Assembly: GCA_002269645.1 (NCBI GenBank)
Contig: NIVC01000059.1
Coordinates: forward strand, 1,054,001 to 1,118,000
Length of the DNA: 64,000 nucleotides
Direction of reading: 5' to 3'
Source: Macrostomum lignano
Taxonomy: Eukaryota
Shown: one piece after another, positions 6,300-57,400 of the stretch
Position numbering within the stretch: position 1 is the stretch's first letter
Layout of the letters: each line of letters starts with the position of its first letter
Position numbers and translations under genes: made by a program
The notes under the pieces: generated by a model
What the model saw: the letters and a program-made list of their open reading frames with translations, nothing else
Told to the model about the DNA's origin: nothing
Database searches by the model: none

Positions 6300-7152
6300 T
6301 ACACAGAGTAAACTGCAACCGTGAAACGACTATTGGTCAAGTTTCAGCTCGATATGTAACTTTGGCTCTGAGCAGGAGCGATTTTCGATGTGTTCCATTT
6401 AAAATACATGTGATTCCAAAATTCATATTGATATTCGAGTACAGGTACTTCTGCTTCACTGATCTTGACGAAACTTTACACAGAGTAAACTGCAACCGTG
6501 AAACGACTATTGGTCAAGTTTCAGCTCGATATGTAACTTTGGCTCTGAGCAGGAGCGATTTTCGATGTGTTCCATTTAAAATACATGTGATTCCAAAATT
6601 CATATTGATATTCGAGTACAGGTACTTCTGCTTCACTGATCTTGACGAAACTTTACACAGAGTAAACTGCAACCGTGAAACGACTATTGGTCAAGTTTCA
6701 GCTCGATATGTAACTTTGGCTCTGAGCAGGAGCGATTTTCGATGTGTTCTATTTAAAATACATGTGATTCCAAAATTCATATTGATATTCGAGTACAGGT
6801 ACTTCTGCTTCACTGATCTTGACGAAACTTTACACAGAGTAAACTGCAACCGTGAAACGACTATTGGTCAAGTTTCAGCTCGATATGTAACTTTGGCTCT
6901 GAGCAGGAGCGATTTTCGATGTGTTCTATTTAAAATACATGTGATTCCAAAATTCATATTGATATTCGAGTACAGGTACTTCTGCTTCACTGATCTTGAC
7001 GAAACTTTACACAGAGTAAACTGCAACCGTGAAACGACTATTGGTCAAGTTTCAGCTCGATATGTAACTTTGGCTCTGAGCAGGAGCGATTTTCGATGTG
7101 TTCCATTTAAAATACATGTGATTCCAAAATTCATATTGATATTCGAGTACAG
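6300..7152 (+). repeat. 177-bp tandem repeat, left arm of the foldback element
   Basis: TACACAGAGTAAACTGC recurs at 6300, 6477, 6654, 6831 and 7008. Confidence 0.95.
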
Positions 7153-14300: not shown

Positions 14301-15117
14301 GACTGGTCACTAATGTAGAGATCCCTGTTCCTGATCTTGTGGATATTCAGCCTAGCTATTCACTTTCGAAAAGAAAAAATCCCAAAGATCCTTTCCCACC
14401 ACAACCAAGGTGCACGAAGGCAGCCTGACATTCCTATGCGAGTCCTGCGGGCGCACGTTCCCAACCCAGTACCGGTTGAACCGGCACGCCAGGTCGCACA
14501 ACCGGGATCGCCAGCTGGACTGTCCGCAGTGCGGCCGCCTGTTCCACCGGGCCGACAAGCTGAAACTGCATCTGGAGTGCGTGCACTCCGACCGGCGGCC
14601 TCACCTGTGCCACCTGTGCGGCCGGGCTTATAACAGGCGCGACAAACTGGCTCTGCATATTAAACAGCATCAAAGAAAGGAGGAACAGCAACAGCAGAAG
14701 CAGCAACAACAGCAAGAGCAGCAGCAAAAGCAATCGAAGCCATGTAAAGTCGGTCGGCGACCGCGTAAAAAAGCGACAGTTGCGACAGAAGGCCCTCGTA
14801 GGGAGGAGCCTACGCCTACGCCGCCCACACAGCCGCATGTTCCGCCGCCGCCGTCGTCTCTTCCGACAGCGCATTGCCCGAATTCTCCTCTAGGAGACGC
14901 TCTGATTAGCATAGCCAACGGCTGTCTGCACGATGACGTCATGTCGGACGGATTTCTTCTGCAGCAGCAGCAGCAACAGCAACAACAGCAACAACAACAT
15001 CAGCAGCAGATCATTTTCTTAGAATCATTCGACCAGCCGGAGCAGCAACACTTGGCACTCTATTCTCCCCTATCTGGCGCTTTCTTTGCCGCTAACGATG
15101 GCAATCTAATGCAGTGA
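11316..15117 (+). CDS. C2H2 zinc-finger protein, 10 fingers, polyQ C-terminus (4 coding exons, about 615 aa)
   Basis: Exons 11316-11814, 12397-12832, 13390-13594 and 14410-15117 join in frame over GT-AG introns (1848 nt). Fingers split by introns are restored on splicing: CRYCDLK|FAKKTAFARHVAVDH and CEQCGRLFHSDREFHEHMAS|VH. The start may lie further upstream. Confidence 0.88.
11870..12350. repeat. 34-bp minisatellite in ZnF intron 1
   Basis: Unit TTCACTCAATCCTCGAGTCACTTGTTTCTCTCCA, period 34. Confidence 0.95.
12900..13360. repeat. 21-bp minisatellite with degenerate flanks in ZnF intron 2
   Basis: Core unit CCATGAGCCATCCCCAATTGT, period 21 at about 13130-13270. Confidence 0.9.
13705..14275. 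repeat. 50-bp minisatellite in ZnF intron 3
   Basis: GATATCTAAC recurs every 50 bp (e.g. 13921, 13971); about 11 copies. Confidence 0.95.
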
Positions 15118-21462: not shown

Positions 21463-23226
21463 TCAGAAGTTTTCAAATCGAACCGATCGACTATTTGCCT
21501 GCGGCAGAATGTGCAGCACAATGAGCACGCTCAGCACTGTGCTCAACAGGTAGAACTCGAACAAAAACCTGTCAATCACCTCGGATAAGTAGGTCCACTT
21601 CTGCTGCTCGCATTTGTTCCGCTGCTCTCGCCTGTTGCACACCGTTGCCGCCGACGCCGACTCCGGCTCGTTGATCGCATCGGTCTCGGAGACTTCCAAG
21701 TCATCATCGGAGTCGCTGCTGCTGCTGCCATCCATCGGTGTCGTCAGGGGAGTCTTCTTGCTGGCGTCGTCAATATTCTTCTTCTTCTTCTTCAGTCCTT
21801 TTCTCGCCTCGCGGCGTGGACGCTCTGCCGCCGTTCGGCAAAGCTTTCAACCTTACTGTTGTTTCGAGAGGTGCCTGGGTCGGTTAGGTCCAAGCCACTC
21901 TGTTGCGAGGAGGTTTGCCCATAGACCGCGGCTGTTACGCCGAGGCTACGGGCCTCTCTCCCCCCCCCGATTCTGCTTTGCCAACCGGGTTGCTCCGGTT
22001 GCCCGCTTGGCACCGCGTGTTGACGGCACGCTTCGTGGAGGTGCAGAATCTTGCCAAGCCAGATCTTGCCAAGCGTCGTCAATATCGGACTGTCCTTCGT
22101 TCCTTCGTCGTCGTTGAAGCCTCAGCGCTGGCGGACTCGGCTGAGCAGCCACGTTCGGGCGGCAGCTGAAGGTGAGGGGACCGAGCAGGCGGCTGCCCAG
22201 CAGCCACAGCCAAGCTGGGACGCGCGGACAAGGGTCGTGGTGGCCTCTGCCGTGCACGTGGAGAACCAGAGTAGCCAGGATGAGCGACAGCGAGTTCAAC
22301 GTCATCACCATGTTGAGGAAGATGCCAATCAACGGTGTGGAGTTCGATTCGGGCGTGTTTTCGGCGATCAACAGCTCGAGGAAGTAGAGAAACAAGAAGA
22401 CGTTCAGGCCGATTTCAACTTTCTCGGCAATGTGACACGGCAGCCAGAAGCTGAACATGGTGAGGACGCACAGCATGATGCTGGGAGCGATGACCGTGTA
22501 TGAATAATACAGAGCCTTGCGCTGGATGTGCAGCTTGAGCGACAGCACCGGATAAGTCAAATTGTTGAGCATCTCTCGACGACTTCGGCTGATTTTTATG
22601 CCGGCGAGTTTCAGTTCCTGGTGCTCCTGCAGCTGGGAGATGTCCACTCCGCTCTGGCCGTCTGGCAGGCTCAACTCCAACTGCGACGCGTCGTAAGTCC
22701 ACGAGGCGAACAGCACCTCGCAGAACTGATGATCGAATGGAAAGTACAGCACGTCAACGCTGCAGGAGCTGCGAACTGTGGTCGGGATGGTCCAGAGCAC
22801 CCGGCCGGAGTGGTGCACGCTCACCCGACTGTTGTTGTCGTGCACGAAGCCCTCGTTGCCATCCGCGGCGTTGTTGTAAACGTAGATGTCGGGCAGCCAG
22901 ATGCTGGTGGCTGGCAGCACGGTGTCCCGAATTCCTGCAAAGTCAGCCGGCCGCCAGACCAGACGCTCGTCAACCCAGGACTCCATGACAACGGCATTTA
23001 AATGCAGGATCTGATTCTTCTCGTCCAGATCCATCAGGCGGCTGAGCTGTACACTGAAGGTGACGCCTAGGACGGCGCTGGCAGACAGCACTGGCCGGGT
23101 GTTGGCATCGTATTCAAGCATCAGACTGCGGTGCAGCCGGTCCTGTGGTGGCTCCAAAGCAGCAACAACCAGCGTGAGCTCCACTAGAAGCAACAATAGT
23201 AGCAACGCCAAGCAGTTGAGCAGCAT
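21463..23226 (-). CDS. Nicotinic acetylcholine receptor-family Cys-loop channel subunit, non-alpha type (no vicinal Cys); M3-M4 loop interrupted by stops
   Basis: Signal peptide; YDANTRPV; WLPDIYVYNNAD; Cys-loop CSVDVLYFPFDHQFC; FASWTYD; M1-M3 within ORF 21946-23226. M4 (KWTYLSEVIDRFLFEFY) lies in the same frame at 21463-21735, behind three in-frame stops. Confidence 0.88.
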
Positions 23227-30100: not shown

Positions 30101-33100
30101 CTCATTTTCATGCATTTCAGGACAGAGACTGAACAATATGATCCGAGCAACATCTCCCTGCAAGGCTGCTCACCCGGTTCCACGTGCTTCAGCTCAGGCC
30201 TGAAGTCTTCAACGGGCATGACAGTCAGAGTGGCTTCGGCAAAGATCTGGCCGAGAGGGTTGCGAGCGAGCACGCGCAACCGAGTGTCGCCGATGTCCTT
30301 GCAGCGCAGGATCTCAAAGTAGTTGATCGAGCCATCGTGGTACACCTTGCAGTTCGAAGTCTGGAAGTTATTAAAATATTCGTTTGCGAGTGACTGTGAA
30401 AAACAAACGAAAAATGGTAAAATCTGGTAGATTTTTGCGCTTGAAAAGCAGCAACATAAGCAGTGCACAGTCACTTCAATTAAACAATAATTTTTGCGCC
30501 TGTTCTTACAGTAAATTCGATACTTTTTACATTTACAACATTAAGTACTATAAACGAAATTCAATTTGGGTAAGCAACTCTCACGCTGAAGCACACGACT
30601 ATTGGGGTTCTACAATTCATAACTGTGATAATATATAGTACGAAAATACAATAAAGTCACCACTTAGCATAGCGTTTTTCGCAGCTGATGAGGCAGGATG
30701 CATAATTAAAAACTAAATTTGTTTAAACGTTTCTTCCGTCGAACGCCTCTATTGAAGCTGAAGCGCGATTTTTTTACAAAGCCGTGCGTTCCTTTTGCCG
30801 CTGCGACGCAAAAATCAATAGTTTATACTGACTACTAGCAGTAGATTACTCGAATGTGCACACTAATGCAATATAAGCAGCCTTACATCGCTTGTGTCAA
30901 TGTTATTGTTGACACTTTCAGTTTCATTAACCTCGTCCGAGTCCTGTTAGGAAAAGTGGAGCTTGACAAGTTGGAAATGTATTGTGCAAGTTTATATCAA
31001 AAATTTTGTTATTCACACGAGGTAAAATTTAAAAGCAAAGGGAAACAGAAAAAGAATTAACACGACTGTGAAATCAAATTGAGCTGATGGACTTCATCAA
31101 CTGCACAACCGATTTCAGTGACATCAAAATTGAGACAGTTTCTATAACGTCAAGACAATTGCATCAAAATCAAGACAGTTGCACCAACGTCACGACAGTT
31201 GCACCAATGTCAAGACAGTTGCACCAACATCACGACAGTTGCACCAATGTCAAGACAGTTGCACCAACATCAAGAAATTTGCACCAACATCAAGACCACT
31301 ACAACTTTAATCGAGCTATAAGTAACTTCTTAAATCCAATAGAATTGTGACTGCGTCTGTAAATTAAAGACAGACACGGTGCCACGTGTTGGACACCTTT
31401 GCAGTCAAGACAAGACACAAGATACATCGTTGTCTTTACGAAACTAATGGATTTGGCCTTCGAACAGTCGCGAGTACATAGTGAAAGATACAGCGGTGGC
31501 CATATTGTTTCAGATGCATCAAAGGTAAATAAGGCTGGTGATGCAGGTTGAGGTAATGGTACGGATTGTTGTTTGGTATTTCATAACGCGAACAATCATG
31601 CTGCATTACGAGCAAAAATACATATGTAGTTTCAACTAGAAGAGCAAGACACGGAAGTTTTTTTTTGTTTCTCAGGCGATGAGTACATGACAAGTATTAT
31701 CTATTCAACGGTACGATAAAATCCAAGGGCTTACGGAAGCAATCATCTGCTCGTTGAGATACCAGGCCACTCGAGGCCTTGGGAAACCACTGAGCTTCAC
31801 CAGAAACTTTGCCGGATAGCCTTCGCATACGGTTACGGACTCTGGCATGATGTCGAAGTGAGGCTGAGACTGCGGCTCAACAAATTCGCGGAATTGAAAC
31901 TCCTCGGGTCCGATCGGAGCCCTAGAAAGGTTACGGGTGTTTCATTTAAAGTGAATTTCGAGCGCGTTTGTACAGAATTTACAGATCTTTACGAGGGGAG
32001 AAAGTCTATGCCACAGAAGAACTTTTACAATCTAAATGACTCCTACGTATTTAGACGCCAACCGAAGGACGTCCAGCTAATTTTTGGACTGTAAATTAGC
32101 CGCTCAGAAACTGTAACTCACTCTCTCCACTGTCGCTCAAGATCCTCTAGCCGTTGAAAGCCCTGTGCACCTCCGGGTAACTGCGTTCGCGTCACCACCG
32201 ACTCGCTCGCGTGGCACAGTACGGCGACTCGGTTGCTTTCAACTGCGCCAGACCGATTGCGCACCACCGCCCAGTACTGGCCGGAGTCTTCAGCATAGCA
32301 GTGCCCGATCTGCAACCAGGCAAGGCCCCTCTCGCAGTCGGTGTGCACCCGCGAGCCCAGCGTCACTGCTTGGCCGTCCTTCAACCAGTCGACGCTCAGG
32401 TTACCGTCTTTGGCCGGCTCAATCTGCAGTTTTGTGTGTTTTGTAATTTTACCAATCTGTTTTTAGTAAAGAAAGTGAGTAAAATTTCTGTTTTTCTACT
32501 CACGACAGTAGTCTAAGACCACGTGATAAGATGCTAAAATAAAACTATCATTAGAAGAGATTCTACCATGGCTAAACGACAACCGGGCGCTATACGCTCA
32601 TTTTTCAACGCTTTGAAATCGTTATTCAAGGCTACTAAAAAGACGAACACATTAATGAGCCAATGCCTGCCTCCAAAACCACAGACAAAATCTATCATTA
32701 TTTTGTTTAGGCCCATAGACGATTTAGAACCATAGAACCATAGAAATCTTAAAACCATAGACAATACCATAGAACTATAGAACCATACCATAGCATAGAA
32801 CACAAAATACACTAGCGATACGACAGCTAGATATGCGTTCCTTACCGAATTTCTAAGAAAATCGAGTGTATTCCGTCCTTTTTGACACTGTCGCAAATCA
32901 AGGCGCAGAGGCAAGCAGTTTGGTCAATTACGCTGATACCTGAGAATTCTCACAGGTTGTATAGTGGGCCTAAACTTCTTATCATCAGGCATGTGTATAC
33001 TGTGCCTCTGTGGTCGGCCATCATGTGGTCTTACTGTACATGCGTAAGTCAGATGAAAAGCACGTCACCGCGCTCCAAATCGACCCCGGGAATTTCGCAC

Positions 33101-36100
33101 GATGCGTCACCGCTGCTTCGCGCCAAAAAGTGTCAACTTTCCCTTACTTAAGTAGTTGAATCCTCACCTGCAGCTGCAGACCCAATCGTTCGCCCTCCTT
33201 GAGCTCCGGCGGCTGCACCAGACCCCTGACAATGACTGGCGGCGGCTGCTGCTGAGCATCAGCGCCAGGCATCGCGGCTCGTCCAGTCGCCATCTCCTCC
33301 TCCAGCTGCATCAGACTGCGGATACTGTGCTCCGCGTTGCCCGGCAACTGCGATGACGTCACCACGCCGGTGCCGCCGGGCTGGCAGACAAGTTGAGCAG
33401 CAGTGCTCTGTGCCTGGCCGTGCTCGCTCTCCAGCACGGCGCAGTACGTGCCGCTGTCCTCCGAGTTTACGTAGGCAAATTTTAGCCAAGCTAGCCCGAG
33501 TTCGAATCCTGCCGTGATTCGGGAGCCGAATTGGACCAGGACGCCGTCGCGAAACCAGTGCGCCTGCACCCGGTTACCGTTGCCGGGGTCGGCTCGGGCT
33601 GAGAGCGCAGCAGGGGCCGCCGCCTCCGGCACCTGCAGCTGCGCTGGGCTTAGCGGGGCCAGGAAGCGCGGCGGGTCGGCGCGGTGAAGATCGGCTTCCA
33701 TCCTGCGGGTGCGTGTTGACAATCGGGTGTACAAAATATTACCTTTAACTCACCATCAGCCATTTTTTACTCATTATCTACATTCAAAACCCACCGATTG
33801 CTCATTGCTACACCCAGCGATTGCTCATTGCTACACCCACCGATTGCTCATTGCTACACCCACCGATTGCTCATTGCTACACCCACCGATTGCTCATCGC
33901 TACACCTACCAATCGCTCATCGCTACACCCACCGATTGCTCATCGCTACACCTACCAATCGCTCATCGCTACACCCACCGATTGCTCATTGCTACACCCA
34001 CCGATTGCTCATTGCTACACCCACCGATTGCTCATCGCTACACCCACGGATTGCTTATCGCTACACCCACCGATTGCTCATCGCTACACCCACCGATTGC
34101 TTATCGCTACACCCACCGATTGCTCATTGCTACACCCACCGATTGCTCATTGCTACACCCACCGATTGCTCATTGCTACACCCACCGATTGCTCATCGCT
34201 ACACCCACCGATTGCTCATTGCTACACCCACCGATTGCTCATCGCTACACCCACCGATTGCTCATCGCTACACCCACGGATTGCTTATCGCTACACCCAC
34301 CGATTGCTCATTGCTACACCCACAGTTAATTCTCCAACCAGGGCACTCACGGTCTGAACTCTTCCCCGTACTCCTCCAGTCGTTGAATGTTCATCACCGA
34401 GCTCGCTGGCAGGGCAGATGCGGTCACCACCCCAGCAGAGCCAGAGCAGCTGTGAATGATTGTTTTTTTGAACGATTTGACTCAAGTATTCGATGTTACT
34501 GCCACTAATGAGACTCCACTCATGACTCACCTCAGCTGAGCTGTGTTGCTCTGAGCCGAACCGTGTTTATTCGTTGCCAAGCAACAATAGAGGCCACTGT
34601 CCTCCGGGTAGCAATAGATAATCTCCAGTGCCGTGTAGCCTCTATCGTACACTGCCCGAATTCTCGAGCCTAAAGTTACCGGGACTCCATTCTTATACCA
34701 TTCCACCTGGATGTTTGAGTCCGCCGCCGGCGTCACTCGGGTCTCGAATCGTGCGCTGGAGTTCTCTGCGACCACTGCGCTATCAATCTGGCGGACAAAC
34801 TGAGGCGCCGATTGCGGAATTCGATCGTCATAGTCCTGGCGGGTGCTGCGGGCGCTCAGACGCTCGTCCAGACGGTCGATGTTGGCCACCATGGACTGCT
34901 CGGGCAACTGGGTGTCCGTCACAACGCCCTCCTCGGCCATGACCCTGGCAGTTTCGGTAAATTTGAGCATTTTTTGAACTTCTCAGGCGTTGTGAAATCA
35001 GGGGTTTTCAGCTTGTGGATACTGGGGCCCAGGCTGTGAAAGTCAGGCCTCGGCCTGGAACTCACGTCAGCGACATCGGATTGCTCTGGTCCATACCGAA
35101 GCTGCTGCGCACCACGCAAGAGTACTCGCCGCTGTCCTCCGGGTAGGTGTGCAGGATGTCCAACGAAACGTAGCCACGTTCGAATGTCGTGTTCAATCGC
35201 GAGCCTGGGGGAGGGTCGAAGAGAGACCGGGTGCTTGACGCAATATGTGAAGCTAGTGCTTGAAAACGCGGTGGGGAGGGTCGAAGAGATACCGGGTGCT
35301 TGACGCAATATGTGAAGCTAGTGCTTGAAAACGCGGTGGGGCGGGTCGAAGAGAGACCGGGTGCTTGACGCAATATGTAAAGTTGGTGCTTGAAAACGCG
35401 TTGGAAAGTTTAAAGGGAAAGTTTTTTAAAGTCTGTCGAATATCTAATTTAAAAAAATAAATCAGATGACATCAGATATGGTACTCCCGACCACTGTCGG
35501 CTTGAGACCCAAGTTTATGAATGGCAGTCATTATAGTATTTTTTTTACTTGTCAGAGGTATTATAGATGGTCTCTTCTAAATTCTCTTTTGCACCTTATA
35601 AAATAAAAAAACTCCGGTCTCTCTATCCGGCCCTCAGGTCGGTTGAAACTTCACAATAGCAATCCGGCCATGCAGCTCAGGGTTTGTGCCTCTTCTCAGC
35701 TCTTTCTCTCATCTCTCCTCTTTTCTCTCATCTCTCTTTCTCTATTCCCTCCTCTTTCCACTCTTATCTGGCCTAGAGCCATTCTGTGCACTATTAAGAA
35801 AATTTTGCAAAATAAAAAGGACAGGCATCGGCTCACCAGCATTGAGTGGCAGGCCGTCCTTGCACCACTCAGCCTGCATCGAGCTGTCATTCAACGGAGC
35901 CACTCGACAGTCGATTCTAACTGCGGCGCCTTCGCTTACGCTGGCAGACGGCCGCGGCTGGCGTACAAACCTGGGTGCCTCGCCAACTGCACCTTGGCGA
36001 TGCTGCTGCTGCTGCTGCTGCTGCTTCTTGTTGAAAGTGGCCGATCGACTGAGCTCGCCATTGATGTCGAATCCAGATGGGGCCGGACTCAGCTGTTGCT

Positions 36101-37849: not shown

Positions 37850-40800
37850 TCACAATGTGGAATCTATGATTCACGATGTATGATCTGTTGTTCACAACGT
37901 AGAATCTTTGTTTCTCAATATGACAGTTGTAATTCACGATGTAGCATTTGTGATTAACGGTTTAGTATCTGCAACTCACAATGTAGTATTTGTGGTTCTG
38001 ACTGGACCTATGATTCACACTGTAGCATTTGTGATTCACACTGTAGCATTTGTGATTCACACTGTAGCATTTGTGATTCACACTGTAGCATTTGTGATTC
38101 ACACTGTAGCATTTGTGATTCACACTGTAGCATTTGTGATTCACACTGTAGCATTTGTGATTCACACTGTAGCATTTGTGATTCACACTGTAGCATCTGT
38201 GATTCACACTGTAGCATTTGTGATTCACACTGTAGCATTTGTGATTCACAACTGTAGCATTTGTGATTCACACTGTAGCATCTGTGATTCACGCTGTAGC
38301 ATTTGTGATTCACACTGTAGCATTTGTGATTCACACTGTAGCATTTGTGATTCACACTGTAGCATTTGTGATTCACACTGTAGCATTTGTGATTCACACT
38401 GTAGCATCTGTGATTCACACTGTAGCATTTGTGATTCACACTGTAGCATTTGTGATTCACACTGTAGCATTTGTGATTCACACTGTAGCATTTGTGATTC
38501 ACACTGTAGCATTTGTGATTCACACTGTAGCATTTGTGATTCACACTGTAGCATTTGTGATTCACACTGTAGCATTTGTGATTCACACTGTAGCATCTGT
38601 GATTCACACTGTAGCATTTGTGATTCACACTGTAGCATTTGTGATTCACAACTGTAGCATTTGTGATTCACACTGTAGCATCTGTGATTCACGCTGTAGC
38701 ATTTGTGATTCACACTGTAGCATTTGTGATTCACACTGTAGCATTTGTGATTCACACTGTAGCATTTGTGATTCACACTGTAGCATTTGTGATTCACACT
38801 GTAGCATCTGTGATTCACACTGTAGCATTTGTGATTCACACTGTAGCATTTGTGATTCACACTGTAGCATCTGTGATTCACGCTGTAGCATTTGTGATTC
38901 ACACTGTAGCATCTGTAATTCCCACTGTAGCATCTGTGATTCACACTGTAGCATTTGTGATTCACACTGTAGCATTTGTGATTCACACTGTAATAGCTAT
39001 GATTCACACTGTAGTATCTATGATTCACATTCTAGCACTTGTGATCCCCACTGTAGTATCTGTGATTCACACTGTAGTATCTGTGATTCACACTGTACTA
39101 TCTATGATTCACACTGTAGCATCTATGATTCACACTGTAGCATTTGTGATTCACACTGTAGCATTTGTGATTCACACTGTAGCGTTTGTGATCCCCACTG
39201 TAGCATTTGTGATTCACACTGTAGCATTTGTGATTCACACTGTAGCATTTGTGATTCACACTGTAGCATTTGTGATTCACACTGTAGCATTTGTGATTCA
39301 CACTGTAGTATCTGTGATTCACACTGTAGCATCTGTGATTCACACTGTAGCATTTGTGATTCACACTGTAGCATTTGTGATTCACAACTGTAGCATTTGT
39401 GATTCACACTGTAGCATCTGTGATTCACGCTGTAGCATTTGTGATTCACACTGTAGCATCTGTAATTCCCACTGTAGCATCTGTGATTCACACTGTAGCA
39501 TTTGTGATTCACACTGTAGCATTTGTGTTTCACACTGTAATAGCTATGATTCACACTGTAGCATCTGTAATTCCCACTGTAGCATCTGTGATTCACACTG
39601 TAGCATTTGTGATTCACACTGTAGCATCTGTAATTCACACTGTAGCATTTGTGATTCACACTGTAGCATTTGTGATTCACAACTGTAGCATTTGTGATTC
39701 ACACTGTAGCATCTGTGATTCACGCTGTAGCATTTGTGATTCACACTGTAGCATCTGTAATTCCCACTGTAGCATCTGTGATTCACACTGTAGCATTTGT
39801 GATTCACACTGTAGCATTTGTGTTTCACACTGTAATAGCTATGATTCACACTGTAGCATCTGTAATTCCCACTGTAGCATCTGTGATTCACACTGTAGCA
39901 TTTGTGATTCACACTGTAGCATTTGTGATTCACACTGTAATAGCTATGATTCACACTGTAGTATCTATGATTCACATTCTAGCACTTATGATCCCCACTG
40001 TAGCATCTGTGATTCACACTGTAGTATCTGTGATTCACACTGTACTATCTATGATTCACACTGTAGCATCTGTGATTCACACTGTAGCATTTGTGATTCA
40101 CACTGTAGCATTTGTGATTCACACTGTAGCATTTGTGATTCACACTGTAGCATCTGTGATTCACACTGTAGCATTTGTGATTCACAACTGTAGCATTTGT
40201 GATTCACACTGTAGCATCTGTGATTCACACTGTAGTATCTGTGATTCACACTGTAGTATCTGTGATTCACACTGTAGTATCTGCGATTCACACTGTAGTA
40301 TCTGTGATTCACACTGTAGTATCTGTGATTCACACTGTAGTATCTGTGATTCACACTGTAGTATCTGTGATTCACACTGTAGCATTTGTGATTCACACTG
40401 TAATAGCTTTGATTCACACTGAAGTATCTGTGATTCACACTGTAGCATTTGTGTTTCACACTGTAATAGCTATGATTCACACTGTAGTATCTATGATTCA
40501 CATTGTAGCACTTTTGATCCCCACTGTAGTATCTGTGATTCACACTGTAGTATCTGTGATTCACACTGTAGTATCTGCGATTCACACTGTAGTTTTTGTG
40601 ATTCACACTGTAGTATCTGTGATTCACACTGTAGTATCTGTGATTCACACTGTAGTATCTGTGATTCACACTGTAGTATCTGTGATTCACACTGTAGTAT
40701 CTGTGATTCACACTGTAGTATCTGTGATTCACACTGTAGCATCTGTGATTCACACTGTAATAGCTATGATTCACACTGTAGTATCTATGATTCACATTCT

Positions 40801-41465
40801 AGCACTTGTGATCCCCACTGTAGTATCTATGATTCACATTCTAGCACTTGTGATCCCCACTGTAGTATCTGTGATTCACACTGTAGTATCTGTGATTCAC
40901 ACTGTACTATCTATGATTCACACTATAGTATCTGTGATTCACACTGTACTATCTATGATTCCCAATGTAGCATCTGTGATTCACACTGTAGTATCTGTGA
41001 TTCACACTGTAGCATTTGTGATTCACACTGTAGCATTTGTGATTCACACTGTAGCATTTGTGATTCACACTGTAGCATTTGTGATTCACACTGTAGCATT
41101 TGTGATTCACAACTGTAGCATTTGTGATTCACACTGTAGCATTTGTGATTCACACTGTAGCATTTGTGATTCCCACTGTATTTTCTGTGATTCACACTGT
41201 AGTATCTGCGATTCACACTGTAGTATCTGTGATTCACACTGTAGCATTTGTGATTCACACTGTAGCATTTGTGATTCACACTGTAGCATTTGTGATTCAC
41301 ACTGTAATAGCTATGATTCACACTGTAGTATCTATGATTCACATTGTAGCACTTGTGATTTCCACTATAGCATCTGTGATTCACACTGTAGTATCTGTGA
41401 TTCACACTGTACTATCTATGATTCCCACTGTAGCATCTATGATTCACACTGTAGCATTTTTGATT
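37850..41465. repeat. 3.6-kb 21-bp satellite GTGATTCACACTGTAGCATTT with higher-order structure
   Basis: About 170 copies with variant units; 22-bp insertion units near 38250, 38650, 39385, 39681, 40185 and 41111. Confidence 0.97.
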
Positions 41466-42122: not shown

Positions 42123-43020
42123 CGTGAATCTCACTCCTCTGTGAATCTCACTCTCTGTGAATCTCACTCTGTGTGAATCTCACTCTGTGAATCTCACTCT
42201 CTGTGAATCTCACTCTCTGTGAATCTCACTCTCTGTGAATCTCACTCTCTGTGAATCTCACTCTCTGTGAATCTCACTCTCTGTGAATCTCACTCTCTGT
42301 GAATCTCACTCTCTGTGAATCTCACTCTCTGTGAATCTCACTCTCTGTGAATCTCACTCTCTGTGAATCTCACTCTCTGTGAATCTCACTCTCTGTGAAT
42401 CTCACTCTCTGTGAATCTCACTCTCTGTGAATCTCACTCTCTGTGAATCTCACTCTTTCAATCTCACTCTGTGAATCTCACTCTCTGTGAATCTCACTCT
42501 CTGTGAATCTCACTCTCTGTGAATCTCACTCTCTGTGAATCTCACTCTCTGTGAATCTCACTCTCTGTGAATCTCACTCTCTGTGAATCTCACTCTCTGT
42601 GAATCTCACTCTCTGTGAATCTCACTCTCTGTGAATCTCACTCTCTGTGAATCTCACTCTGTCAATCTCACTCTGTGAATCTCACTCTCTGTGAATCTCA
42701 CTCTCTGTGAATCTCACTCTCTGTGAATCTCACTCTCTGTGAATCTCACTCTCTGTGAATCTCACTCTCTGTGAATCTCACTCTCTGTGAATCTCATTCT
42801 CTGTGAATCTCACTCTCTGTGAATCTCACTCTCTGTGAATCTCACTCTCTGTGAATCTCACTCTCTGTGAATCTAACTCTGTGAATCTCACTCTCTGTGA
42901 ATCTCACTCTCTGTGAATTTCACTCTCTGTGAATCTCACTCTCTGTGAATCTCACTCTCTGTGAATCTCACTCTCTGTGAATCTCACTCTCTGTGAATCT
43001 AACTCTGTGAATTTCACTCG
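42123..43020. repeat. 16-bp satellite GTGAATCTCACTCTCT
   Basis: About 55 nearly homogeneous copies. Confidence 0.97.
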
Positions 43021-43622
43021 TTAGAAATCATGTCACAGTTGAGATCCCAGTATTTCCCAGTTTGACTACTGATATCCCAGTATTTTACAATCTCACTACT
43101 GAGAATCTTCATTCCTCAAATCTCGTTCCGAAGTATTTCAATCCTCAAAATCTCGCTCTTGAGAATTGTAAACATCAAAATCCACTCCTGGAGAATATTT
43201 TTGTTAAATCTGGTTTCTGAGAATTGCAATCTTCAAAATATCACTCCTGAGACCCTAGCCATGTGTTCGAATCTCTAGTTAGTTCACCGCTCGAAGCTCG
43301 TTAGACACAGACTGTCCTTAGCCAACCAACTCTCAGCCAGCATCCCAGAGTTGGAGTCGAAATTGCAGCCAGCCAATACGACCGCTGCATCCCAAGCAAG
43401 CATGGGTTGACACTTGGGATAAAACCGCGGCAATCTTCACCGAGAAGGCGTTGCTTCTTCTCCTCTATAGCCTGAAATCTTCTTGAAGACTTTCTGTTTG
43501 CAACTGTTGCAGCAAATCAATTTCAAGGTAGAAGCTTTGGTTCCTGTATTGCACTAATACCAATTGCATACAAAAGGTTGAATCATCCACCCACCGAATT
43601 TTCAGGCAAAAACTGTCAAAGC

Positions 43623-44186
43623 ATGAAGGTCGCCGCTATGATCGCTTTCATTGCTGTAGCAGCGTTGGTCACTGTTCAGCTCACAGGTTTGTTATACACG
43701 ATCGATTGTTACTCGTATTAAAATTGATTTGAATTTCTAAGAAACCAATCGGTTTCGTTGCATCTCAGACGCCTCCCTGGCCGAGGAGGGTCCGAACAGC
43801 CATCAGATGTTCCGCTTCAAGAAGGGATTTCACTTCTTCCGACTGCGCAAGTCTGCCGCCGCTGCCCAGGGCTGCATGATTAACGACAACGCCTTGGAAG
43901 GGATGGAGATGGTGGTTGTGAGTTAAAACTGCTTCATTTACCCTGTGAACCATTTATCAATCAAAATGCAGCTTCTCGAGCGTCGTCAGAACTGTATCAA
44001 TAAATCAAATTCTAGGGCTGTTTCAAAGGAACTGTCATGCCAGAGTTGTCAGACAGTAACTCAGTCAGTGCTAAACCGTAATCTTTCTTTTTCGTCGTTA
44101 ATTTGCAGAAAGCGGCCCGTTCTGGAAAGCTGTGCAACCAGGACAAGCAGATGCTCAGGGTGTTCCTGGCCAGCTTGCTGCTGTGA
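43623..44186 (+). CDS. Secreted neuropeptide precursor (3 exons, 96 aa) containing KK-GFHFFRL-RK
   Basis: Exons 43623-43686, 43769-43917 and 44109-44186 splice in frame to MKVAAMIAFIAVAALVTVQLTDASLAEEGPNSHQMFRFKKGFHFFRLRKSAAAAQGCMINDNALEGMEMVVKAARSGKLCNQDKQMLRVFLASLLL*. It has a signal peptide, dibasic cleavage sites and a C-terminal Cys pair. AATAAA near 44396 and 44452. Confidence 0.85.
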
Positions 44187-44624
44187 GCCGGATCCGGCGC
44201 CTACTCCTGAGGGACCCGACTCAGTTATTAAATCATTCGGTTCTGCTGGGGTAACCATGACAGAATTGGCGCAGCCCAGCAAGACACGAATATAAAGGAT
44301 TACCCTTACAATCAGTTAATACCATCTCGTGTGTCATGCTTTTAAATTGTTGACACAATTATAAACTAAACGATCATGTTTAACTAAAGGCTTTGAATAA
44401 ATCTGAAAGTCAGTAACTTTCACTCACCAGTTAATCGAGGTCGCGCGGTCCAATAAAACTGTTAATAATTGATTCAATTCTAACAAAATCTGTTGTCTTA
44501 ATATTCTTAGTTCTTTTGATAAATAGTTTGTTATCGAGATCTATTGATTGTTAAGAAGCTTTCTCTGAAAATTGTGTTAATCAGAGTATATTTTGAACTG
44601 AAGTTTAGACAGGCAGGTTGGGTG

Positions 44625-45105
44625 AAGACTGAAGCTTTGAAAGACAGGCTGAAGCTTAGAAAGACAGGCTGAAGCTTAGAAAGACAGGCTGAAGCTTAGA
44701 AAGACAGACTGAAGCTTGGAAAGACAGGCTGAAGCTAAGAAAGACAGGCTGAAGCTTTGAAAAACAGACTGAAGCTTTGAAAGACAGACTGAAGCTTAGA
44801 AAGACAGGCTGAAGCTTTGAAAGACAGACTGAAGCTTAGAAAGACAGACTGAAGCTTTGAAAGACAGGCTGAAGCTTTGAAAGACAGACTGAAGCTTAGA
44901 AAGACAGGCTGAAGCTTAGAAAGACAGGCTGAAGCTTAGAAAGACAGGCTGAAGCTTTGAAAGACAGACTGAAGCTTTGAAAGACAGACTGAAGCTTTGA
45001 AAGACAGGCTGAAGCTTTGAAAGACAGGATTGGTGAAAACTGAAGCTTAGAAAGACAGACTGAAGCTTAGAAAGACAGAATTGGTGAAGACTGAAGCTTA
45101 GAAAG
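44625..45105. repeat. 20-bp minisatellite AAGACAG(G/A)CTGAAGCTT(A/T)GA
   Basis: Period 20 directly visible. Confidence 0.95.
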
Positions 45106-45565: not shown

Positions 45566-46133
45566 TTTGGTTAGGGTTTGGTTAGGGTTCGGTTAGGGTT
45601 TGGCTAGGGTTTGGTTGGGGTTTGGTTAAGGGTTTGGTTAGGGTTTGGTTAGGGTTTGGTTAGGGTTTGGTTAAGGGTTTGGTTAGGGTTTGGTTAGGGT
45701 TTGGTTAGGGTTTGGTTAGGGTTTGGTTAGGGTTTGGTTAGGGTTTGGTTAGGGTTTGGTTAAGGGTTTGGTTAAGGGTTTGGTTAGGGTTTGGTTAGGG
45801 TTTGGTTAGGGTTTGGTTAGGGTTTGGTTAGGGTTTGGTTAGGGTTTGGTTAGGGTTTGGTTAGGGTTTGGTTAGGGTTTGGTTAGGGTTTGGTTAGGGT
45901 TTGGTTAGGGTTTGGTTAAGGGTTTGGTTAAGGGTTTGGTTAAGGGTTTGGTTAGGGTTTGGTTAGGGTTTGGTTAGGGTTTGGTTAAGGGTTTGGTTAA
46001 GGGTTTGGTTAGGGTTTGGTTAGGGTTTGGTTAGGGTTTGGTTAGGGTTTGGTTAGGGTTTGGTTAGGGTTTGGTTAGGGTTTGGTTAGGGTTTGGTTAG
46101 GGTTTGGTTAGGGTTTGGTTAGGGTTTGGTTTA
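45566..46133 (+). repeat. Interstitial telomere-like 11-bp repeat (TTAGGGTTTGG)n
   Basis: About 50 copies, with occasional TTAAGGGTTTGG variants. Confidence 0.95.
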
Positions 46134-54400: not shown

Positions 54401-57400
54401 CAAGCGAAAATGGCACATCTACATGCAAAAATAGCACATCTACATGCAAAAATGGCACATCTACATGCAAAAATGGCACATCTACATGCAAAAATGGCAC
54501 ATCTACATGCAAAAATAGCACATCTACATGCAAAAATGGCACATCTACATGCAAAAATAGCACATCTACATGCAAAAATGGCACATCTACATGCAAAAAT
54601 AGCACATCTACATGCAAAAATGGCACATCTACATGCAAATTGGCACATCTACATGCAAAAATGGCACATCTACAAGAAAAAAGGCATTGACAAGCGAAAA
54701 TGGCACATCTACATGCAAAAATGGCACATCTACATGCAAAAATGGCACATCTACATGCAAAAATGGCACATCTACATGCAAAAATAGCACATCTACATGC
54801 AAAAATGGCACATCTACATGCAAAAATGGCACATCTACATGCAAATTGGCACATCTACATGCAAAAATGGCACATCTACATGCAAAAATGGCACATCTAC
54901 ATGCAAATTGGCACATCTACATGCAAAAATGGCACATCTACAAGAAAAAAGGCATTTACAAGCGAAAATGGCACATCTACATGCAAAAATAGCACATCTA
55001 CATGCAAAAATGGCACATCTACATGCAAAAATAGCACATCTGCATGCAAAAATAGCACATCTACATGCAAAAATGGCACATCTACATGCAAAAATGGCAC
55101 ATCTACATGCAAATTGGCACATCTACATGCAAAAATGGCACATCTACAAGAAAAAAGGCATTGACAAGCGAAAATGGCACATCTACATGCAAAAATAGCA
55201 CATCTACATGCAAAAATGGCACATCTAAATGCAAAAATGGCACATCTACATGCAAATTGGCACATCTACATGCAAAAATGGCACATCTACAAGAAAAAAG
55301 GCATTGACAAGCGAAAATGGCACATCTGCATGCAAAAATAGCACATCTACATGCAAAAATAGCACATCTACATGCAAAAATGGCACATCTACATGCAAAA
55401 ATAGCACATCTGCATGCAAAAATAGCACATCTGCATGCAAAAATAGCACATCTACATGCAAAAATGGCACATCTACATGCAAAAATGGCACATCTACATG
55501 CAAAAATAGCACATCTACATGCAAAAATGGCACATCTACATGCAAAAATAGCACATCTGCATGCAAAAATAGCACATCTGCATGCAAAAATAGCACATCT
55601 ACATGCAAAAATAGCACATCTGCATGCAAAAATAGCACATCTGCATGCAAAAATAGCACATCTACATGCAAAAATGGCACATCTACATGCAAAAATAGCA
55701 CATCTGCATGCAAAAATAGCACATCTGCATGCAAAAATAGCACATCTGCATGCAAAAATGGCACATATACAAGAAAAAAGGCATTGACAAGCGGAAATGG
55801 CACATCTGCAATAAAATTGGCTCATCTACAAGCAAAAATGGTATGTATGTAAGCAAAAAATGGCACATCCATTAGCAAAAATGGCATATCTGTTGTGTTG
55901 CTACTCTATGCGTGTGCGTAATTGTGTGTACATTCGATGTACACCTGTTAGCTATCGATCGCATTACAATATATGATATATAAGTGAGAGCGCGGTAAGT
56001 TTGAGAGCTTGAGAGTTTCGCCTACAAACTTGCAGACTGGCTGGCTTATTCATTATACAACAATATCTGCAAGCAAAAAATGGCACATCTAAATGCTAAA
56101 GTGGCACATCTACAAGCAAAAATGGCACATCTGCATAAAAAATGGCACATCTACAAACAAGTGGCAGATCTGCAAGCAAAAATGGCACATCTACAAACAA
56201 AAGTGGCACATCTGCAAGCAAAAATGGCACATCTGCATAAAAAATGTGCCATTTTTATTGCCATTTTTTATGCCATTTTGGCCATAAAAAATGTGCTATT
56301 TTTTATGGCCAAACGAAGCAAACGATTTTTGCTTCGTTTGGCCATTTGCCAAACGAAAATGGCACATCTACAAACAAAAATGGCACATCTACATGAAAAA
56401 ATGGCACATCTACATGCAAAAGTGGCACATCTGCAAGCAAAAATGGCACATCTGCATGAAAAAATGGCACATCTAAATGCAAAAGTGGCACATCTACAAG
56501 CAAAAATGGCACATCTGCATAAAAAATGGCACATCTACAAACAAGTGGCAGATCTGCAAGCAAAAATGGCACATTTACAAACAAAAGTGGCACATCTACA
56601 AGCAAAAAAATGGCACATCTACAAGCAAAAATGGCACATCTACAAGCAAAAATGGCAACATCTGCAAACAAAAATAGCACATCTACAAAGCAAAAGTGGC
56701 ACTTTTTTATTCATCAATGGCACATAAATACTCAAAAAGCGCACTGAAGAGCAAAAATGGCATATTAGAATCCAAAACTGGCAAGTTCACAATAAAAATG
56801 GCACACTGACCCACCTTCTGAATTGCTGAATTCCGCTAGGCATTCCGCTGGATTCGCGACTGGCGCATCAGACAGCGAACCCGTCTGTCCCGGTCCAGTT
56901 TGAAAAAGCTTAAAGTGAAAAAGTTTGAGAAGGGTGAGCAGTTTTTTTTTTAAATATTGGTTAAACAGCTTTATTACTGTTCTCTATTGTCTGTAGTTCA
57001 TTATAATAATCGACCGAATTCCTATTATAACAACACATTGGCTGGCAGGCACTGATCCCTACGAGTGCTGCGCCATCTGTCTCGAAGACTTTGAGCCTGG
57101 CGACAAGCTGAGAATTCTGCCGTGCAATCATGGTGAGCATCTCGTTTGGATTGAGACATTTGGGACAGTGGGATCTGGGACTTCAAAAGGTTCAAGATAT
57201 GAGACTTAGGGTGAGATATGAGAGTTAGGGAGAGATATGAGATATGAGATTTGGAATGAGATGAGATTTTGGGTGCGATATAAGATTTAGAGTGAGATGT
57301 TAGATTTAGAGTGAGATATGTGACTTAAGGTGATATATTAGATTTAGAGTGAGATATGAGACTTCGAGTGAGATATGAGACTTCGAGTAAGATATGAGAC

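What the first reader, a model, noticed from the sequence alone, without database searches (positions are those of the whole stretch)
43623..44186. Hidden neuropeptide prohormone between two satellites
Seen: three small exons absent from the ORF track give a signal peptide, then ...SHQMFRF-KK-GFHFFRL-RK-, then a C-terminal segment with two Cys. Known: dibasic sites mark convertase cleavage, and no C-terminal Gly means non-amidated peptides. From memory (to verify), GFHFFRL resembles the planarian SPP-18/19 and parasitic-flatworm npp-28 (G/A)YHFFRL peptides. Inference: a flatworm neuropeptide gene with a second related peptide (…HQMFRF) and a disulfide-bonded co-peptide, probably unannotated.
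Basis: partly seen in the sequence, partly recalled or inferred. Interest (0 to 1): 0.7.

Follow-up and report, generated by a model that had tools for sequence, protein, structure and literature searches.

The report
Flatworm FRL-peptide neuropeptide precursor gene
A small three-exon gene of the flatworm Macrostomum lignano encodes a secreted precursor of two short "FRL/FRF" peptides, belonging to a neuropeptide family already known from planarians and blood flukes; it is real, but it is an ordinary new member of that family and its gene model is already in GenBank as a "hypothetical protein".

Summary
Exons 43623-43686, 43769-43917 and 44109-44186 (+) join through GT..AG introns into a 96-aa open frame: a signal-peptide-like N-terminus, then ...SHQMFRF-KK-GFHFFRL-RK-, then a 47-aa tail with two Cys.

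The window is Macrostomum lignano contig NIVC01000059.1. This exact protein is already deposited as PAA50095.1/PAA92253.1, "hypothetical protein BOX15_Mlig024884g3/g2". That annotation was built from RNA-seq transcripts, so "unannotated" holds only for function.

Planarian SPP-18/19 yield MS-confirmed, non-amidated GYHFFRL; SPP-19 also yields KHIGHQIFRL; Schistosoma npp-28 encodes AYHFFRL. The whole architecture matches SPP-19 (BLASTP E 2e-11). A profile built without any Macrostomum sequence scores 43.7 bits (E 2e-6 for 1.8 billion proteins). The three-exon, phase-1/phase-0 structure is shared with trematode genes.

A full HMMER scan adds context. The family is found only in flatworms and includes GnRH-like precursors: Smed-grh-1, a polyclad "GnRH-2", and M. 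lignano Mlig008027. The window gene is one of three M. lignano paralog groups that lack the GnRH-type peptide, and it is closer to its M. lignano paralogs than to spp-19.

Verdict: new member of a known kind, modest interest.

The parts
43599..43605 (+). Polypyrimidine-AG (ttttcag) 17 nt upstream of the ATG; possible 5'-UTR or trans-splice acceptor
   Evidence: Sequence. The chimeric UniProt model P0004 enters the neuropeptide reading frame exactly at 43605/43606. Use as an acceptor is inferred, not shown.
43623..43686 (+). Coding exon 1: Met1 to the first base of codon 22; signal-peptide-like segment MKVAAMIAFIAVAALVTVQLT
   Evidence: Hydrophobic core at residues 4-18 and a (-3,-1) site TDA|SL after A23. 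Identical CDS in GenBank.
43687..43768 (+). Intron 1 (82 nt, phase 1, GT..AG, 33% GC)
   Evidence: A phase-1 intron after the signal peptide is shared with the three other M. lignano paralogs, S. mansoni npp-28 and the F. hepatica homolog.
43769..43917 (+). Coding exon 2: spacer, both FRx peptides, both dibasic sites, Cys57
   Evidence: It is the only significant hit in the window to the non-Macrostomum family profile.
43774..43818 (+). Predicted peptide 1, SLAEEGPNSHQMFRF (residues 24-38); counterpart of planarian KHIGHQIFRL / HQIFRL
   Evidence: Alignments. The planarian peptides were seen by MS. The N-terminus depends on the predicted signal cleavage.
43819..43824 (+). Dibasic site KK39-40
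   Evidence: K39 is invariant in the alignments; across the wider family this first basic position is K or R.
43825..43845 (+). Predicted peptide 2, GFHFFRL (residues 41-47), no C-terminal Gly, so non-amidated
   Evidence: FFRL is invariant and the preceding H nearly so; wider family members vary at single positions (GFHYFRL in Smed-grh-1, AYHFFRI in Fasciola). GYHFFRL was MS-confirmed as non-amidated in the planarian.
43846..43851 (+). Dibasic site RK48-49
   Evidence: Same RK as in Smed-spp-19.
43852..43917 (+). First part of the C-terminal peptide (residues 50-71), Cys57 at 43873-43875
   Evidence: C57 is invariant in every alignment made.
43918..44108 (+). Intron 2 (191 nt, phase 0, GTGAGT..AG)
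   Evidence: A phase-0 intron between the two Cys sits at the same or an adjacent alignment column in all M. lignano paralogs, S. mansoni and F. hepatica.
44109..44186 (+). Coding exon 3: residues 72-96 (KAARSGKLCNQDKQMLRVFLASLLL) plus TGA; Cys80 at 44133-44135
   Evidence: C80 and D83 are invariant in every alignment made, and the ...LASLL end is shared with spp-19.
44227..44232 (+). Candidate poly(A) signal ATTAAA, 41 nt after the stop (a second, AATAAA, lies at 44396-44401)
   Evidence: Use not shown.
42124..43019 (.). Upstream flanking satellite (16-mer GTGAATCTCACTCTCT x57); context, not part of the gene
44629..45078 (.). Downstream flanking satellite: 20-mer CTGAAGCTTTGAAAGACAGG x20 over 44629-45028, extended to 45078 by TRF's 40- and 60-nt period rows; context, not part of the gene

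Best explanation
This is Macrostomum lignano gene Mlig024884 (copy g2 or g3), a three-exon gene for a 96-aa secreted prohormone. It belongs to the flatworm 'FRL-containing' family: Smed-spp-18, spp-19, grh-1; Schistosoma npp-28. Proposed mechanism, by analogy with the planarian proteins. The signal peptide is removed, probably after Ala23. A PC2-type convertase cuts after KK39-40 and RK48-49, and a carboxypeptidase trims the basic residues. Three products result: SLAEEGPNSHQMFRF, the non-amidated heptapeptide GFHFFRL, and a 47-aa C-terminal peptide whose two conserved Cys (57, 80) probably form an intramolecular disulfide. The short peptides would act as neuropeptides released from a subset of neurons, presumably on a still unknown receptor. 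Evolutionarily, the gene is a paralog of the M. lignano GnRH-like precursor Mlig008027. It has lost the N-terminal GnRH-type peptide and kept the FRL/two-Cys module, which is the same end state as planarian spp-19. Shown here: the sequence, the splice-compatible structure, identity with a deposited gene product whose annotation was built from RNA-seq transcripts (that specific transcript was not seen here), significant family homology, and a conserved exon-intron structure. Inferred: signal-peptide cleavage site, convertase processing, disulfide, neuronal expression, bioactivity.
For: Spliced ORF with canonical sites and an exon/intron GC contrast. The exact protein is in GenBank, from assembly GCA_002269645.1, and the window is 100% identical to NIVC01000059.1. 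That annotation was built from StringTie/TACO RNA-seq transcripts with TransDecoder ORFs (PMC5730564). BLASTP to Smed-spp-19 gives E 2e-11 over residues 33-95, reaching the C-terminus. A profile of 12 non-Macrostomum members scores 43.7 bits, E 1.9e-6 at Z = 1.84e9. The full HMMER scan finds only flatworm relatives, 17 at E <= 0.001. In the alignments, K39, FFRL44-47, K49, C57, I59, C80 and D83 are invariant and H43 nearly so; in the wider family the Cys pair and D83 stay invariant while the other positions vary conservatively. GYHFFRL, KHIGHQIFRL and HQIFRL were detected by MS in the planarian, non-amidated. spp-18 and spp-19 are expressed in discrete CNS neurons and depend on COE. The same three-exon, phase-1/phase-0 structure occurs in four M. 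lignano paralogs, S. mansoni and F. hepatica. Three genomic copies keep the ORF intact, and all three amino-acid differences fall outside the peptide cores.
Against: No direct read-level RNA-seq, peptidomic or expression data for this gene could be reached with these tools. Differences between copies (4 nonsynonymous vs 2 synonymous nucleotide changes) are too few to demonstrate purifying selection. Peptide 1 ends in FRF rather than FRL and has no dibasic site on its N-terminal side, so its mature form is uncertain. The signal peptide was judged only by hydrophobicity and the (-3,-1) rule. The AlphaFold model is low confidence (pLDDT 54.5), so it says nothing firm about the disulfide. No receptor or function is known for any member of the family.
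Confidence: 0.85

Rival explanations
1. A redundant, decaying duplicate. After the GnRH-like gene duplicated and this copy lost its GnRH peptide, it is still transcribed but no longer makes a needed signal.
For: The GnRH-type peptide is absent from the CDS, the introns and the whole window. M. lignano has three other paralog groups, two of which encode HQIFRL plus GYHFFRL. Substitutions between copies show no clear excess of synonymous changes.
Against: The ORF, both splice-site pairs, both dibasic sites, both Cys and the C-terminal motif are intact in all three copies, and the peptide-coding core is 100% identical. The same GnRH-less architecture yields MS-detected peptides in the planarian. 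Conservation across Macrostomorpha, Tricladida and Trematoda is concentrated on exactly these elements.
Confidence: 0.07
2. A secreted peptide of a non-neural cell type (gland, epidermal or defensive secretion) rather than a neuropeptide. UniProt names the g1 copy 'Venom peptide'.
For: UniProt name for A0A1I8FX78. Planarian spp-18 and spp-19 also label 'unidentified sub-epidermal cells' besides the CNS. No expression data exist for the M. lignano gene.
Against: The name is automatic, and no Pfam family hits the protein. The planarian homologs are expressed in cephalic ganglia and nerve cords and depend on the neuronal factor COE. The dibasic-flanked short peptides are typical of convertase-processed neuropeptides.
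Confidence: 0.06
3. A chance open frame between repeats, with an accidental resemblance of a heptapeptide.
For: The exons are very short and the region is repeat-rich.
Against: Whole-length similarity beyond the heptapeptide. The exact protein is a deposited product of an RNA-seq-derived annotation. Intron phases are conserved in other flatworms. Three syntenic copies exist.
Confidence: 0.01

Closest known systems
Smed-spp-19 (secreted peptide prohormone 19, Schmidtea mediterranea; GenBank GU295186, UniProt E3T7U8)
   Same: Same order of parts. Signal peptide...HQ(I/M)FR(L/F); dibasic site; G(Y/F)HFFRL; RK; Cys; a loop of about 20 residues; Cys-x-x-DK-x-(F/M)L...ASLL at the C-terminus. No GnRH peptide and no amidation Gly. 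BLASTP E 2e-11.
   Different: Only about 31-40% identical. Peptide 1 in the window gene has no upstream KR and ends in FRF. Tyr is replaced by Phe in peptide 2. There is an Ala-rich insert (SAAAAQG) before Cys1, and the Cys-Cys loop is 22 rather than 20 residues. Distance trees put the window gene with M. lignano paralogs, not with spp-19, so it is probably not a one-to-one ortholog.
Flatworm GnRH-like precursors: Smed-grh-1 (GU295185), Stylochoplana pusilla 'GnRH-2' (BCO16381.1), M. lignano Mlig008027 (PAA94807.1)
   Same: They share the entire FRL module and the two-Cys tail. Mlig008027 also shares the linker LAEEG...HQ(I/M)FR(L/F) and the three-exon, phase-1/phase-0 structure.
   Different: Those precursors carry a GnRH-type peptide straight after the signal peptide, followed by an amidation and cleavage signal: Q-x-(F/Y/M)-HFS-...-W-x-P-G-KR. 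The window gene has none. In Mlig008027, intron 1 splits that peptide.
Schistosoma npp-28 (Smp_043650) and its trematode homologs (Fasciola, Opisthorchis, Paragonimus, Calicophoron, Fasciolopsis)
   Same: Signal peptide; dibasic-flanked (A/T)(Y/F)HFFR(L/I); Cys...Cys-x-(E/D)-D-(R/K/Q/L)-x-x-L tail; three coding exons with phase-1 and phase-0 introns.
   Different: They have only one FRL peptide and no HQxFRL peptide. The loop is shorter (17-18 residues) and so is the C-terminus. Introns are much longer in Schistosoma (14 kb and 5 kb).
Smed-spp-18 (GU295184)
   Same: GYHFFRL flanked by KR and KK, and a two-Cys tail with DKK.
   Different: Single FRL peptide. An extra dibasic site after Cys2 releases FIEMISSV. 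The window protein has only DK there.

Membership tests
Flatworm 'FRL-containing' prohormones (spp-18 / spp-19 / grh-1 / npp-28) | N-terminal signal peptide | tested here: met
   K2, hydrophobic core at residues 4-18 (Kyte-Doolittle about 3.0), and a (-3,-1) site TDA|SL. AlphaFold predicts a helix at 3-24. This is a heuristic only; SignalP was not available.
Flatworm 'FRL-containing' prohormones (spp-18 / spp-19 / grh-1 / npp-28) | Heptapeptide (G/A/V/T)(Y/F)H(F/Y)FR(L/I), bounded by dibasic sites on both sides, with no Gly for amidation | tested here: met
   KK-GFHFFRL-RK at residues 39-49. Alignment columns are invariant or vary only within these alternatives.
Flatworm 'FRL-containing' prohormones (spp-18 / spp-19 / grh-1 / npp-28) | C-terminal piece with two Cys 17-22 residues apart, the second followed by x-(D/E)-D/x-(K/R)-x-(F/L/M)-L | tested here: met
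   C57 and C80 with 22 residues between them, then CNQDKQML. C57, C80 and D83 are invariant.
Flatworm 'FRL-containing' prohormones (spp-18 / spp-19 / grh-1 / npp-28) | Statistically significant whole-length sequence similarity | tested here: met
   BLASTP E 2e-11 to spp-19, 1e-10 to grh-1 and 1e-7 to npp-28. The non-circular profile scores 43.7 bits, E 1.9e-6 at Z = 1.84e9.
Flatworm 'FRL-containing' prohormones (spp-18 / spp-19 / grh-1 / npp-28) | Shared gene structure: three coding exons, a phase-1 intron after the signal peptide, a phase-0 intron between the Cys | tested here: met
   Window gene and three M. lignano paralogs. S. mansoni npp-28 and the F. hepatica homolog. Planarian gene structures were not examined.
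Flatworm 'FRL-containing' prohormones (spp-18 / spp-19 / grh-1 / npp-28) | Processed peptides detectable by mass spectrometry; expression in neurons | not testable with these tools
   Shown only for the planarian members. No M. lignano peptidomic or in situ data were found.
GnRH/corazonin-type precursors | GnRH-type peptide directly after the signal peptide, followed by G-K-R: pQ-x-(F/Y)-H-F-S-x-G-W-x-P-amide | tested here: not met
   No such motif in the CDS, the introns or any frame of the 64-kb window. It is present in the paralog Mlig008027, Smed-grh-1 and the polyclad GnRH-2. The gene is related to these precursors but is not a GnRH gene.

The most novel reading that the evidence does not exclude
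The FRL/two-Cys module, not the GnRH-type peptide, is the constantly retained part of flatworm GnRH-like precursors. The GnRH peptide has been lost independently several times: within Macrostomum (three of four paralog groups, including this gene), and separately in the triclad spp-18/19 and trematode npp-28 lines. That would mean that (G/A)(Y/F)HFFRL is an ancient, flatworm-wide signalling peptide. It would have been born inside the 'GnRH-associated peptide' region and later emancipated as stand-alone genes.
Probability: 0.4. Interest if true: 0.45.

Novelty: new member of a known kind. Interest (0 to 1): 0.3.

Why it matters
It gives a functional name to a set of M. lignano 'hypothetical proteins': Mlig024884 g1-g3, and by extension Mlig013730, Mlig034597 and the GnRH-like Mlig008027. 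UniProt currently labels some of them misleadingly ('CBP domain-containing', 'Venom peptide', 'BofC_C domain-containing').

It shows that the YHFFRL peptide family reaches back to Macrostomorpha, an early-branching rhabditophoran lineage, with a conserved exon-intron structure.

M. lignano is transgenic-tractable and amenable to RNAi. Four paralog groups, one with and three without the GnRH-type peptide, offer a practical system for two questions. What do the orphan FRL peptides do, and which receptor do they use? This may also inform work on the npp-28 peptide of schistosomes and liver flukes. None of this is surprising to a specialist: the family and its link to grh-1 were tabulated in 2010.

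Tried and rejected
- Pfam scan of the 96-aa protein and of P0001: no family. The UniProt 'CBP domain' name could not be reproduced.
- First single-sequence search of the 5.8-billion-protein set: only the gene's own cluster. The profile search and the exhaustive HMMER scan were needed to reach relatives.
- AlphaFold2 on the 10-sequence alignment: pLDDT 54.5, pTM 0.24. It predicts only a signal helix, a coil over the peptide region and two C-terminal helices (61-75, 81-95). That is too weak for a fold search, so none was run.
- Search for a hidden GnRH-type exon or relic in intron 1, upstream, or anywhere in the window: none.
- Other family members in the window: none.
- Literature naming the M. 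lignano genes: none found. This covered full-text searches on npp-28, spp-19, HFFRL variants, Mlig024884, Macrostomum with neuropeptide or GnRH, and the supplements of two M. lignano papers. Koziol et al. 2016 (Int J Parasitol), which from memory extends the npp nomenclature, is not held, so prior mention there cannot be excluded.
- Rfam on the whole window: nothing.
- dN/dS between the three copies: too few differences (6 nt) to be informative.
- Strict orthology with spp-19: rejected. The window protein scores higher against M. lignano paralogs, and 0 of 300 bootstrap trees pair it with spp-19.
- One alignment call was a mistake and carries no information.

Full report
**1. What is in the sequence**

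- Exon 1 is 43623-43686, exon 2 is 43769-43917 and exon 3 is 44109-44186, all on the + strand.
- Both introns are GT..AG. The second donor is the strong GTGAGT, and both acceptors follow pyrimidine-rich tracts.
- The joined CDS is 291 nt, in frame. It encodes MKVAAMIAFIAVAALVTVQLTDASLAEEGPNSHQMFRFKKGFHFFRLRKSAAAAQGCMINDNALEGMEMVVKAARSGKLCNQDKQMLRVFLASLLL*.
- Exons are 52-58% GC, against 33% and 39% for the introns.
- The exons sit in prokaryote-style ORFs of only 47, 39 and 27 aa. This explains why they were missing from an ORF track.
- The only dibasic sites are KK39-40 and RK48-49, and the only cysteines are C57 and C80.
- The N-terminus has a basic residue, a 15-residue hydrophobic core and a TDA|SL (-3,-1) site after Ala23.
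- Tandem arrays flank the gene. Upstream lie a 21-mer at 38011-41465 and a 16-mer at 42124-43019. Downstream lie a 20-mer at 44629-45028 (to 45078 on TRF's longer-period rows) and an 11-mer at 45566-46131.

**2. Where it comes from, and whether it is annotated**

- A protein search found one cluster, all from Macrostomum lignano.
- The exact 96-aa sequence is PAA50095.1 / PAA92253.1, 'hypothetical protein BOX15_Mlig024884g3 / g2'.
- Window 33623-54186 is 100% identical to NIVC01000059.1 positions 1087623-1108186 of assembly GCA_002269645.1 (Mlig_3_7).
- That GenBank annotation was produced from genome-guided RNA-seq transcript assemblies (StringTie plus TACO plus a de novo transcriptome), with TransDecoder ORFs (PMC5730564). 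The deposited three-exon CDS is therefore indirect evidence for the two junctions. I could not inspect reads.
- Two further copies exist, on NIVC01003718.1 and NIVC01001158.1 (g1, PAA71544.1), with syntenic flanks. This is expected for the partly duplicated DV1 genome.
- Across the three copies the CDS is 97.9-100% identical. The three amino-acid differences (A14V, A26V, A52D) lie outside both peptides, both cleavage sites and the Cys-containing tail.
- 'Probably unannotated' is therefore wrong for the gene model and right only for the function.
- UniProt entries derived from the older ML2 assembly carry misleading automatic names: 'CBP domain-containing protein', 'Venom peptide', and a 619-aa chimera named after GMC oxidoreductase. 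No Pfam family hits the protein.

**3. The recalled resemblance is real and extends to the whole protein**

Collins et al. 2010 (PMC2953531) report the following in Table 3 and the supplements.
- GYHFFRL is an MS/MS-confirmed, non-amidated peptide from Smed-SPP-18 (KR.GYHFFRL.KK) and SPP-19 (KR.GYHFFRL.RK).
- SPP-19 also yields KHIGHQIFRL and HQIFRL.

The two sequences compare as follows.
- SPP-19: signal - SDDLIV - KR - KHIGHQIFRL - KR - GYHFFRL - RK - DEKC...(20)...CGSDKSFLAELASLL.
- Window protein: signal - SLAEEGPNSHQMFRF - KK - GFHFFRL - RK - SAAAAQGC...(22)...CNQDKQMLRVFLASLLL.

Statistics.
- BLASTP of the two gives E 2e-11 over residues 33-95, reaching the C-terminus.
- To avoid circularity I built a profile from 12 family members of other genera only. 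It scores the window protein at 43.7 bits, E 1.9e-6 even for a 1.84-billion-sequence search space.
- In a six-frame translation of the whole window, the same profile picks exon 2 as the only significant piece and exon 3 as the runner-up.
- In the alignments, K39, F44-F45-R46-L47, K49, C57, I59, C80 and D83 are invariant and H43 is nearly so. Across the wider family only the Cys pair and D83 stay strictly invariant; the others vary conservatively (K/R at the basic sites, F/Y, L/I).

**4. The wider family**

An exhaustive HMMER scan of 1.84 billion representative proteins found 17 hits at E <= 0.001. All are from flatworms.
- Schistosoma npp-28 orthologs.
- Unnamed proteins of Fasciola, Fasciolopsis, Opisthorchis, Paragonimus and Calicophoron.
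- Smed-spp-18 and spp-19.
- A polyclad 'GnRH-2' (Stylochoplana pusilla, BCO16381.1).
- Three more M. lignano gene groups.

The GnRH-like members read as follows.
- Smed-grh-1: signal - QSYHFSNDWLPG-KR - YHTGHQMFRL - KK - GFHYFRL - KK - two-Cys tail.
- Polyclad GnRH-2: signal - QNMHFSNGWQPG-KR ... THDFFRV - RR - VYHFFRL - RK - two-Cys tail.
- M. lignano Mlig008027: signal - QQFHFSHGVNGWKPG-KR - GLAEEGHAGHQIFRL - KK - GYHFFRL - KK - two-Cys tail.

Collins et al. already grouped grh-1, spp-18 and spp-19 as 'FRL-containing' (supplement file 5). So the family is a GnRH-like precursor family in which several members have lost the GnRH-type peptide.

The window gene has no such peptide in its CDS, its introns or anywhere in the 64 kb. 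It therefore fails the defining feature of a GnRH gene while being a clear relative.

**5. Gene structure**

- All four M. lignano groups have three coding exons. A phase-1 intron follows the signal peptide, a phase-0 intron lies between the two Cys, and the last exon is 72-78 nt.
- In Mlig008027 the phase-1 intron splits the GnRH-type peptide (QQFHFSHGVN|GWKPG).
- S. mansoni npp-28 and the F. hepatica homolog have the same three-exon, phase-1/phase-0 layout. Their second intron is within one alignment column of the M. lignano position.
- This is independent support for common descent across Macrostomorpha and Trematoda.

**6. Orthology**

- The window protein scores higher against its M. lignano paralogs than against proteins of other species. 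Scores are 75, 67 and 55 bits for the paralogs, against 42 for spp-19, 40 for grh-1 and 39 for the polyclad gene.
- It shares with the paralogs the LAEEG-type linker and a two-residue-longer Cys loop.
- In NJ bootstraps of the mature region, the four M. lignano groups form a clade in 69% of replicates. Window plus spp-19 pairs in 0%, and the three GnRH-bearing genes form a clade in 0.3%.
- The most economical reading is duplication within the Macrostomum lineage and independent loss of the GnRH peptide there and in the triclad and trematode lines.
- Caveats: only about 60 short aligned positions are available, and the Ala-rich composition of M. lignano proteins could pull them together. I rate this at about 0.4.

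**7. Mechanism**

What is shown here:
- a splice-compatible ORF whose exact product is deposited from an RNA-seq-derived annotation;
- homology to prohormones whose peptides were seen by MS;
- conservation concentrated on the cleavage sites, the heptapeptide and the Cys pair.

What is inferred by analogy with the planarian members and general prohormone biochemistry:
- signal-peptide removal, probably after A23;
- cleavage by a PC2-type convertase after KK39-40 and RK48-49;
- carboxypeptidase trimming;
- no amidation, because there is no Gly; this matches the non-amidated planarian peptide;
- a C57-C80 disulfide in the 47-aa tail.

AlphaFold weakly predicts that tail as two helices, 61-75 and 81-95, joined near C80 (pLDDT 54.5).

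The planarian homologs are expressed in subsets of cephalic-ganglion and nerve-cord neurons and depend on COE. No function or receptor is known for any member.

**8. Rivals**

- A decaying duplicate (0.07). All functional elements are intact in three copies, and the same architecture is productive in planarians.
- A non-neural secreted peptide (0.06). Expression data would settle this.
- Chance (about 0.01). Refuted.

**9. Novelty and score**

- The family, its peptides and its link to the GnRH-like gene were published in 2010, and the gene model has been in GenBank since 2017.
- What appears new, within the literature I could search, has three parts. One is the identification of the M. lignano members and the functional naming of Mlig024884, Mlig013730, Mlig034597 and Mlig008027. 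Another is the conserved intron phases. The third is the suggestion of repeated GnRH-peptide loss.
- Koziol et al. 2016 could not be checked.
- This is a new member of a known kind: useful for annotation and as an entry point for functional work in a tractable flatworm, but not surprising. Interest 0.3.

Noticed in passing
L004 3001-3877 (NIVC01000001.1); proteins P0019, P0028-P0030: M. lignano has an unnamed GnRH-like precursor, Mlig008027 g1/g2/g4/g6, all 'hypothetical protein, partial'. It encodes QQFHFSHGVNGWKPG-KR followed by HQIFRL and GYHFFRL. Copy g6 reads QQFHFSHGWKPG-KR (without VN), which has the canonical 12-residue GnRH length. The phase-1 intron splits the peptide exactly at the VN|G position, so the VN may reflect a donor shift or a difference between copies.
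   Followed up: partly
L005/L006 3001-3632 and L007 3001-5138: There are two more GnRH-less M. lignano paralog groups. Mlig013730 g1-g3 encodes GHQIFRL-KK-GYHFFRL-KK. Mlig034597 g1 encodes HEPVRF-KK-GFHFFRL-RRR. Both have the same three-exon structure, and both are 'hypothetical' or misnamed ('BofC_C domain-containing') in databases.
   Followed up: partly
window 43834-43856 versus UniProt A0A1I8F7C4 (P0001): The ML2-assembly version of the protein reads GFHFFDCASAAAAAQ instead of GFHFFRLRKSAAAAQ. This is what a 1-nt deletion plus a nearby 1-nt insertion would give, and it destroys the peptide end and the RK site. It is probably an assembly indel artefact rather than an allele.
   Followed up: no
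window 30166-35975 and 43605-44183 (+); UniProt A0A1I8GY11 (P0004): A 619-aa UniProt model ('GMC_OxRdtase_N domain-containing') is a chimera. It strings together + strand fragments lying 8-13 kb upstream (over the region where a long minus-strand gene is called in the GenBank annotation) and the three neuropeptide exons, entering at the ttttcag acceptor at 43605.
   Followed up: partly
L001 versus L002/L003, window-equivalent 43000-44500: Mosaic identity between the copies. L001 is 100% identical to L003 upstream of the ATG but 100% identical to the window copy across the CDS. This suggests gene conversion or recombination between duplicated chromosomes, or an assembly mosaic.
   Followed up: no
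window 21946-23226 (-): An uninterrupted 426-aa ATG ORF encodes a Cys-loop ligand-gated ion channel (Neur_chan_LBD E 4e-54, Neur_chan_memb E 5e-14).
   Followed up: no
window 8269-9177 (+): A reverse-transcriptase (RVT_1, E 8e-30) ORF fragment sits among overlapping long ORFs at 6362-9177. It is a retroelement remnant or copy.
   Followed up: no
window 45566-46131: An 11-mer satellite, TTTGGTTAGGG x51 with 97% matches, contains the TTAGGG telomere-type hexamer. It is an interstitial telomere-like array 1.4 kb downstream of the gene.
   Followed up: no
window 38011-41465: A 3.4-kb 21-mer satellite (TGATTCACACTGTAGCATTTG x164) generates many spurious ORFs of more than 200 aa on both strands in the ORF list. 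The array is also present at the paralogous loci.
   Followed up: no
window 14410-15117 (+) and 56080-56727 (+): A C2H2 zinc-finger ORF and a coiled-coil ORF are presumably exons of neighbouring genes. According to the GenBank models, a PA/RING-finger gene starts about 7.3 kb downstream of the prohormone (window about 51481 onward).
   Followed up: no
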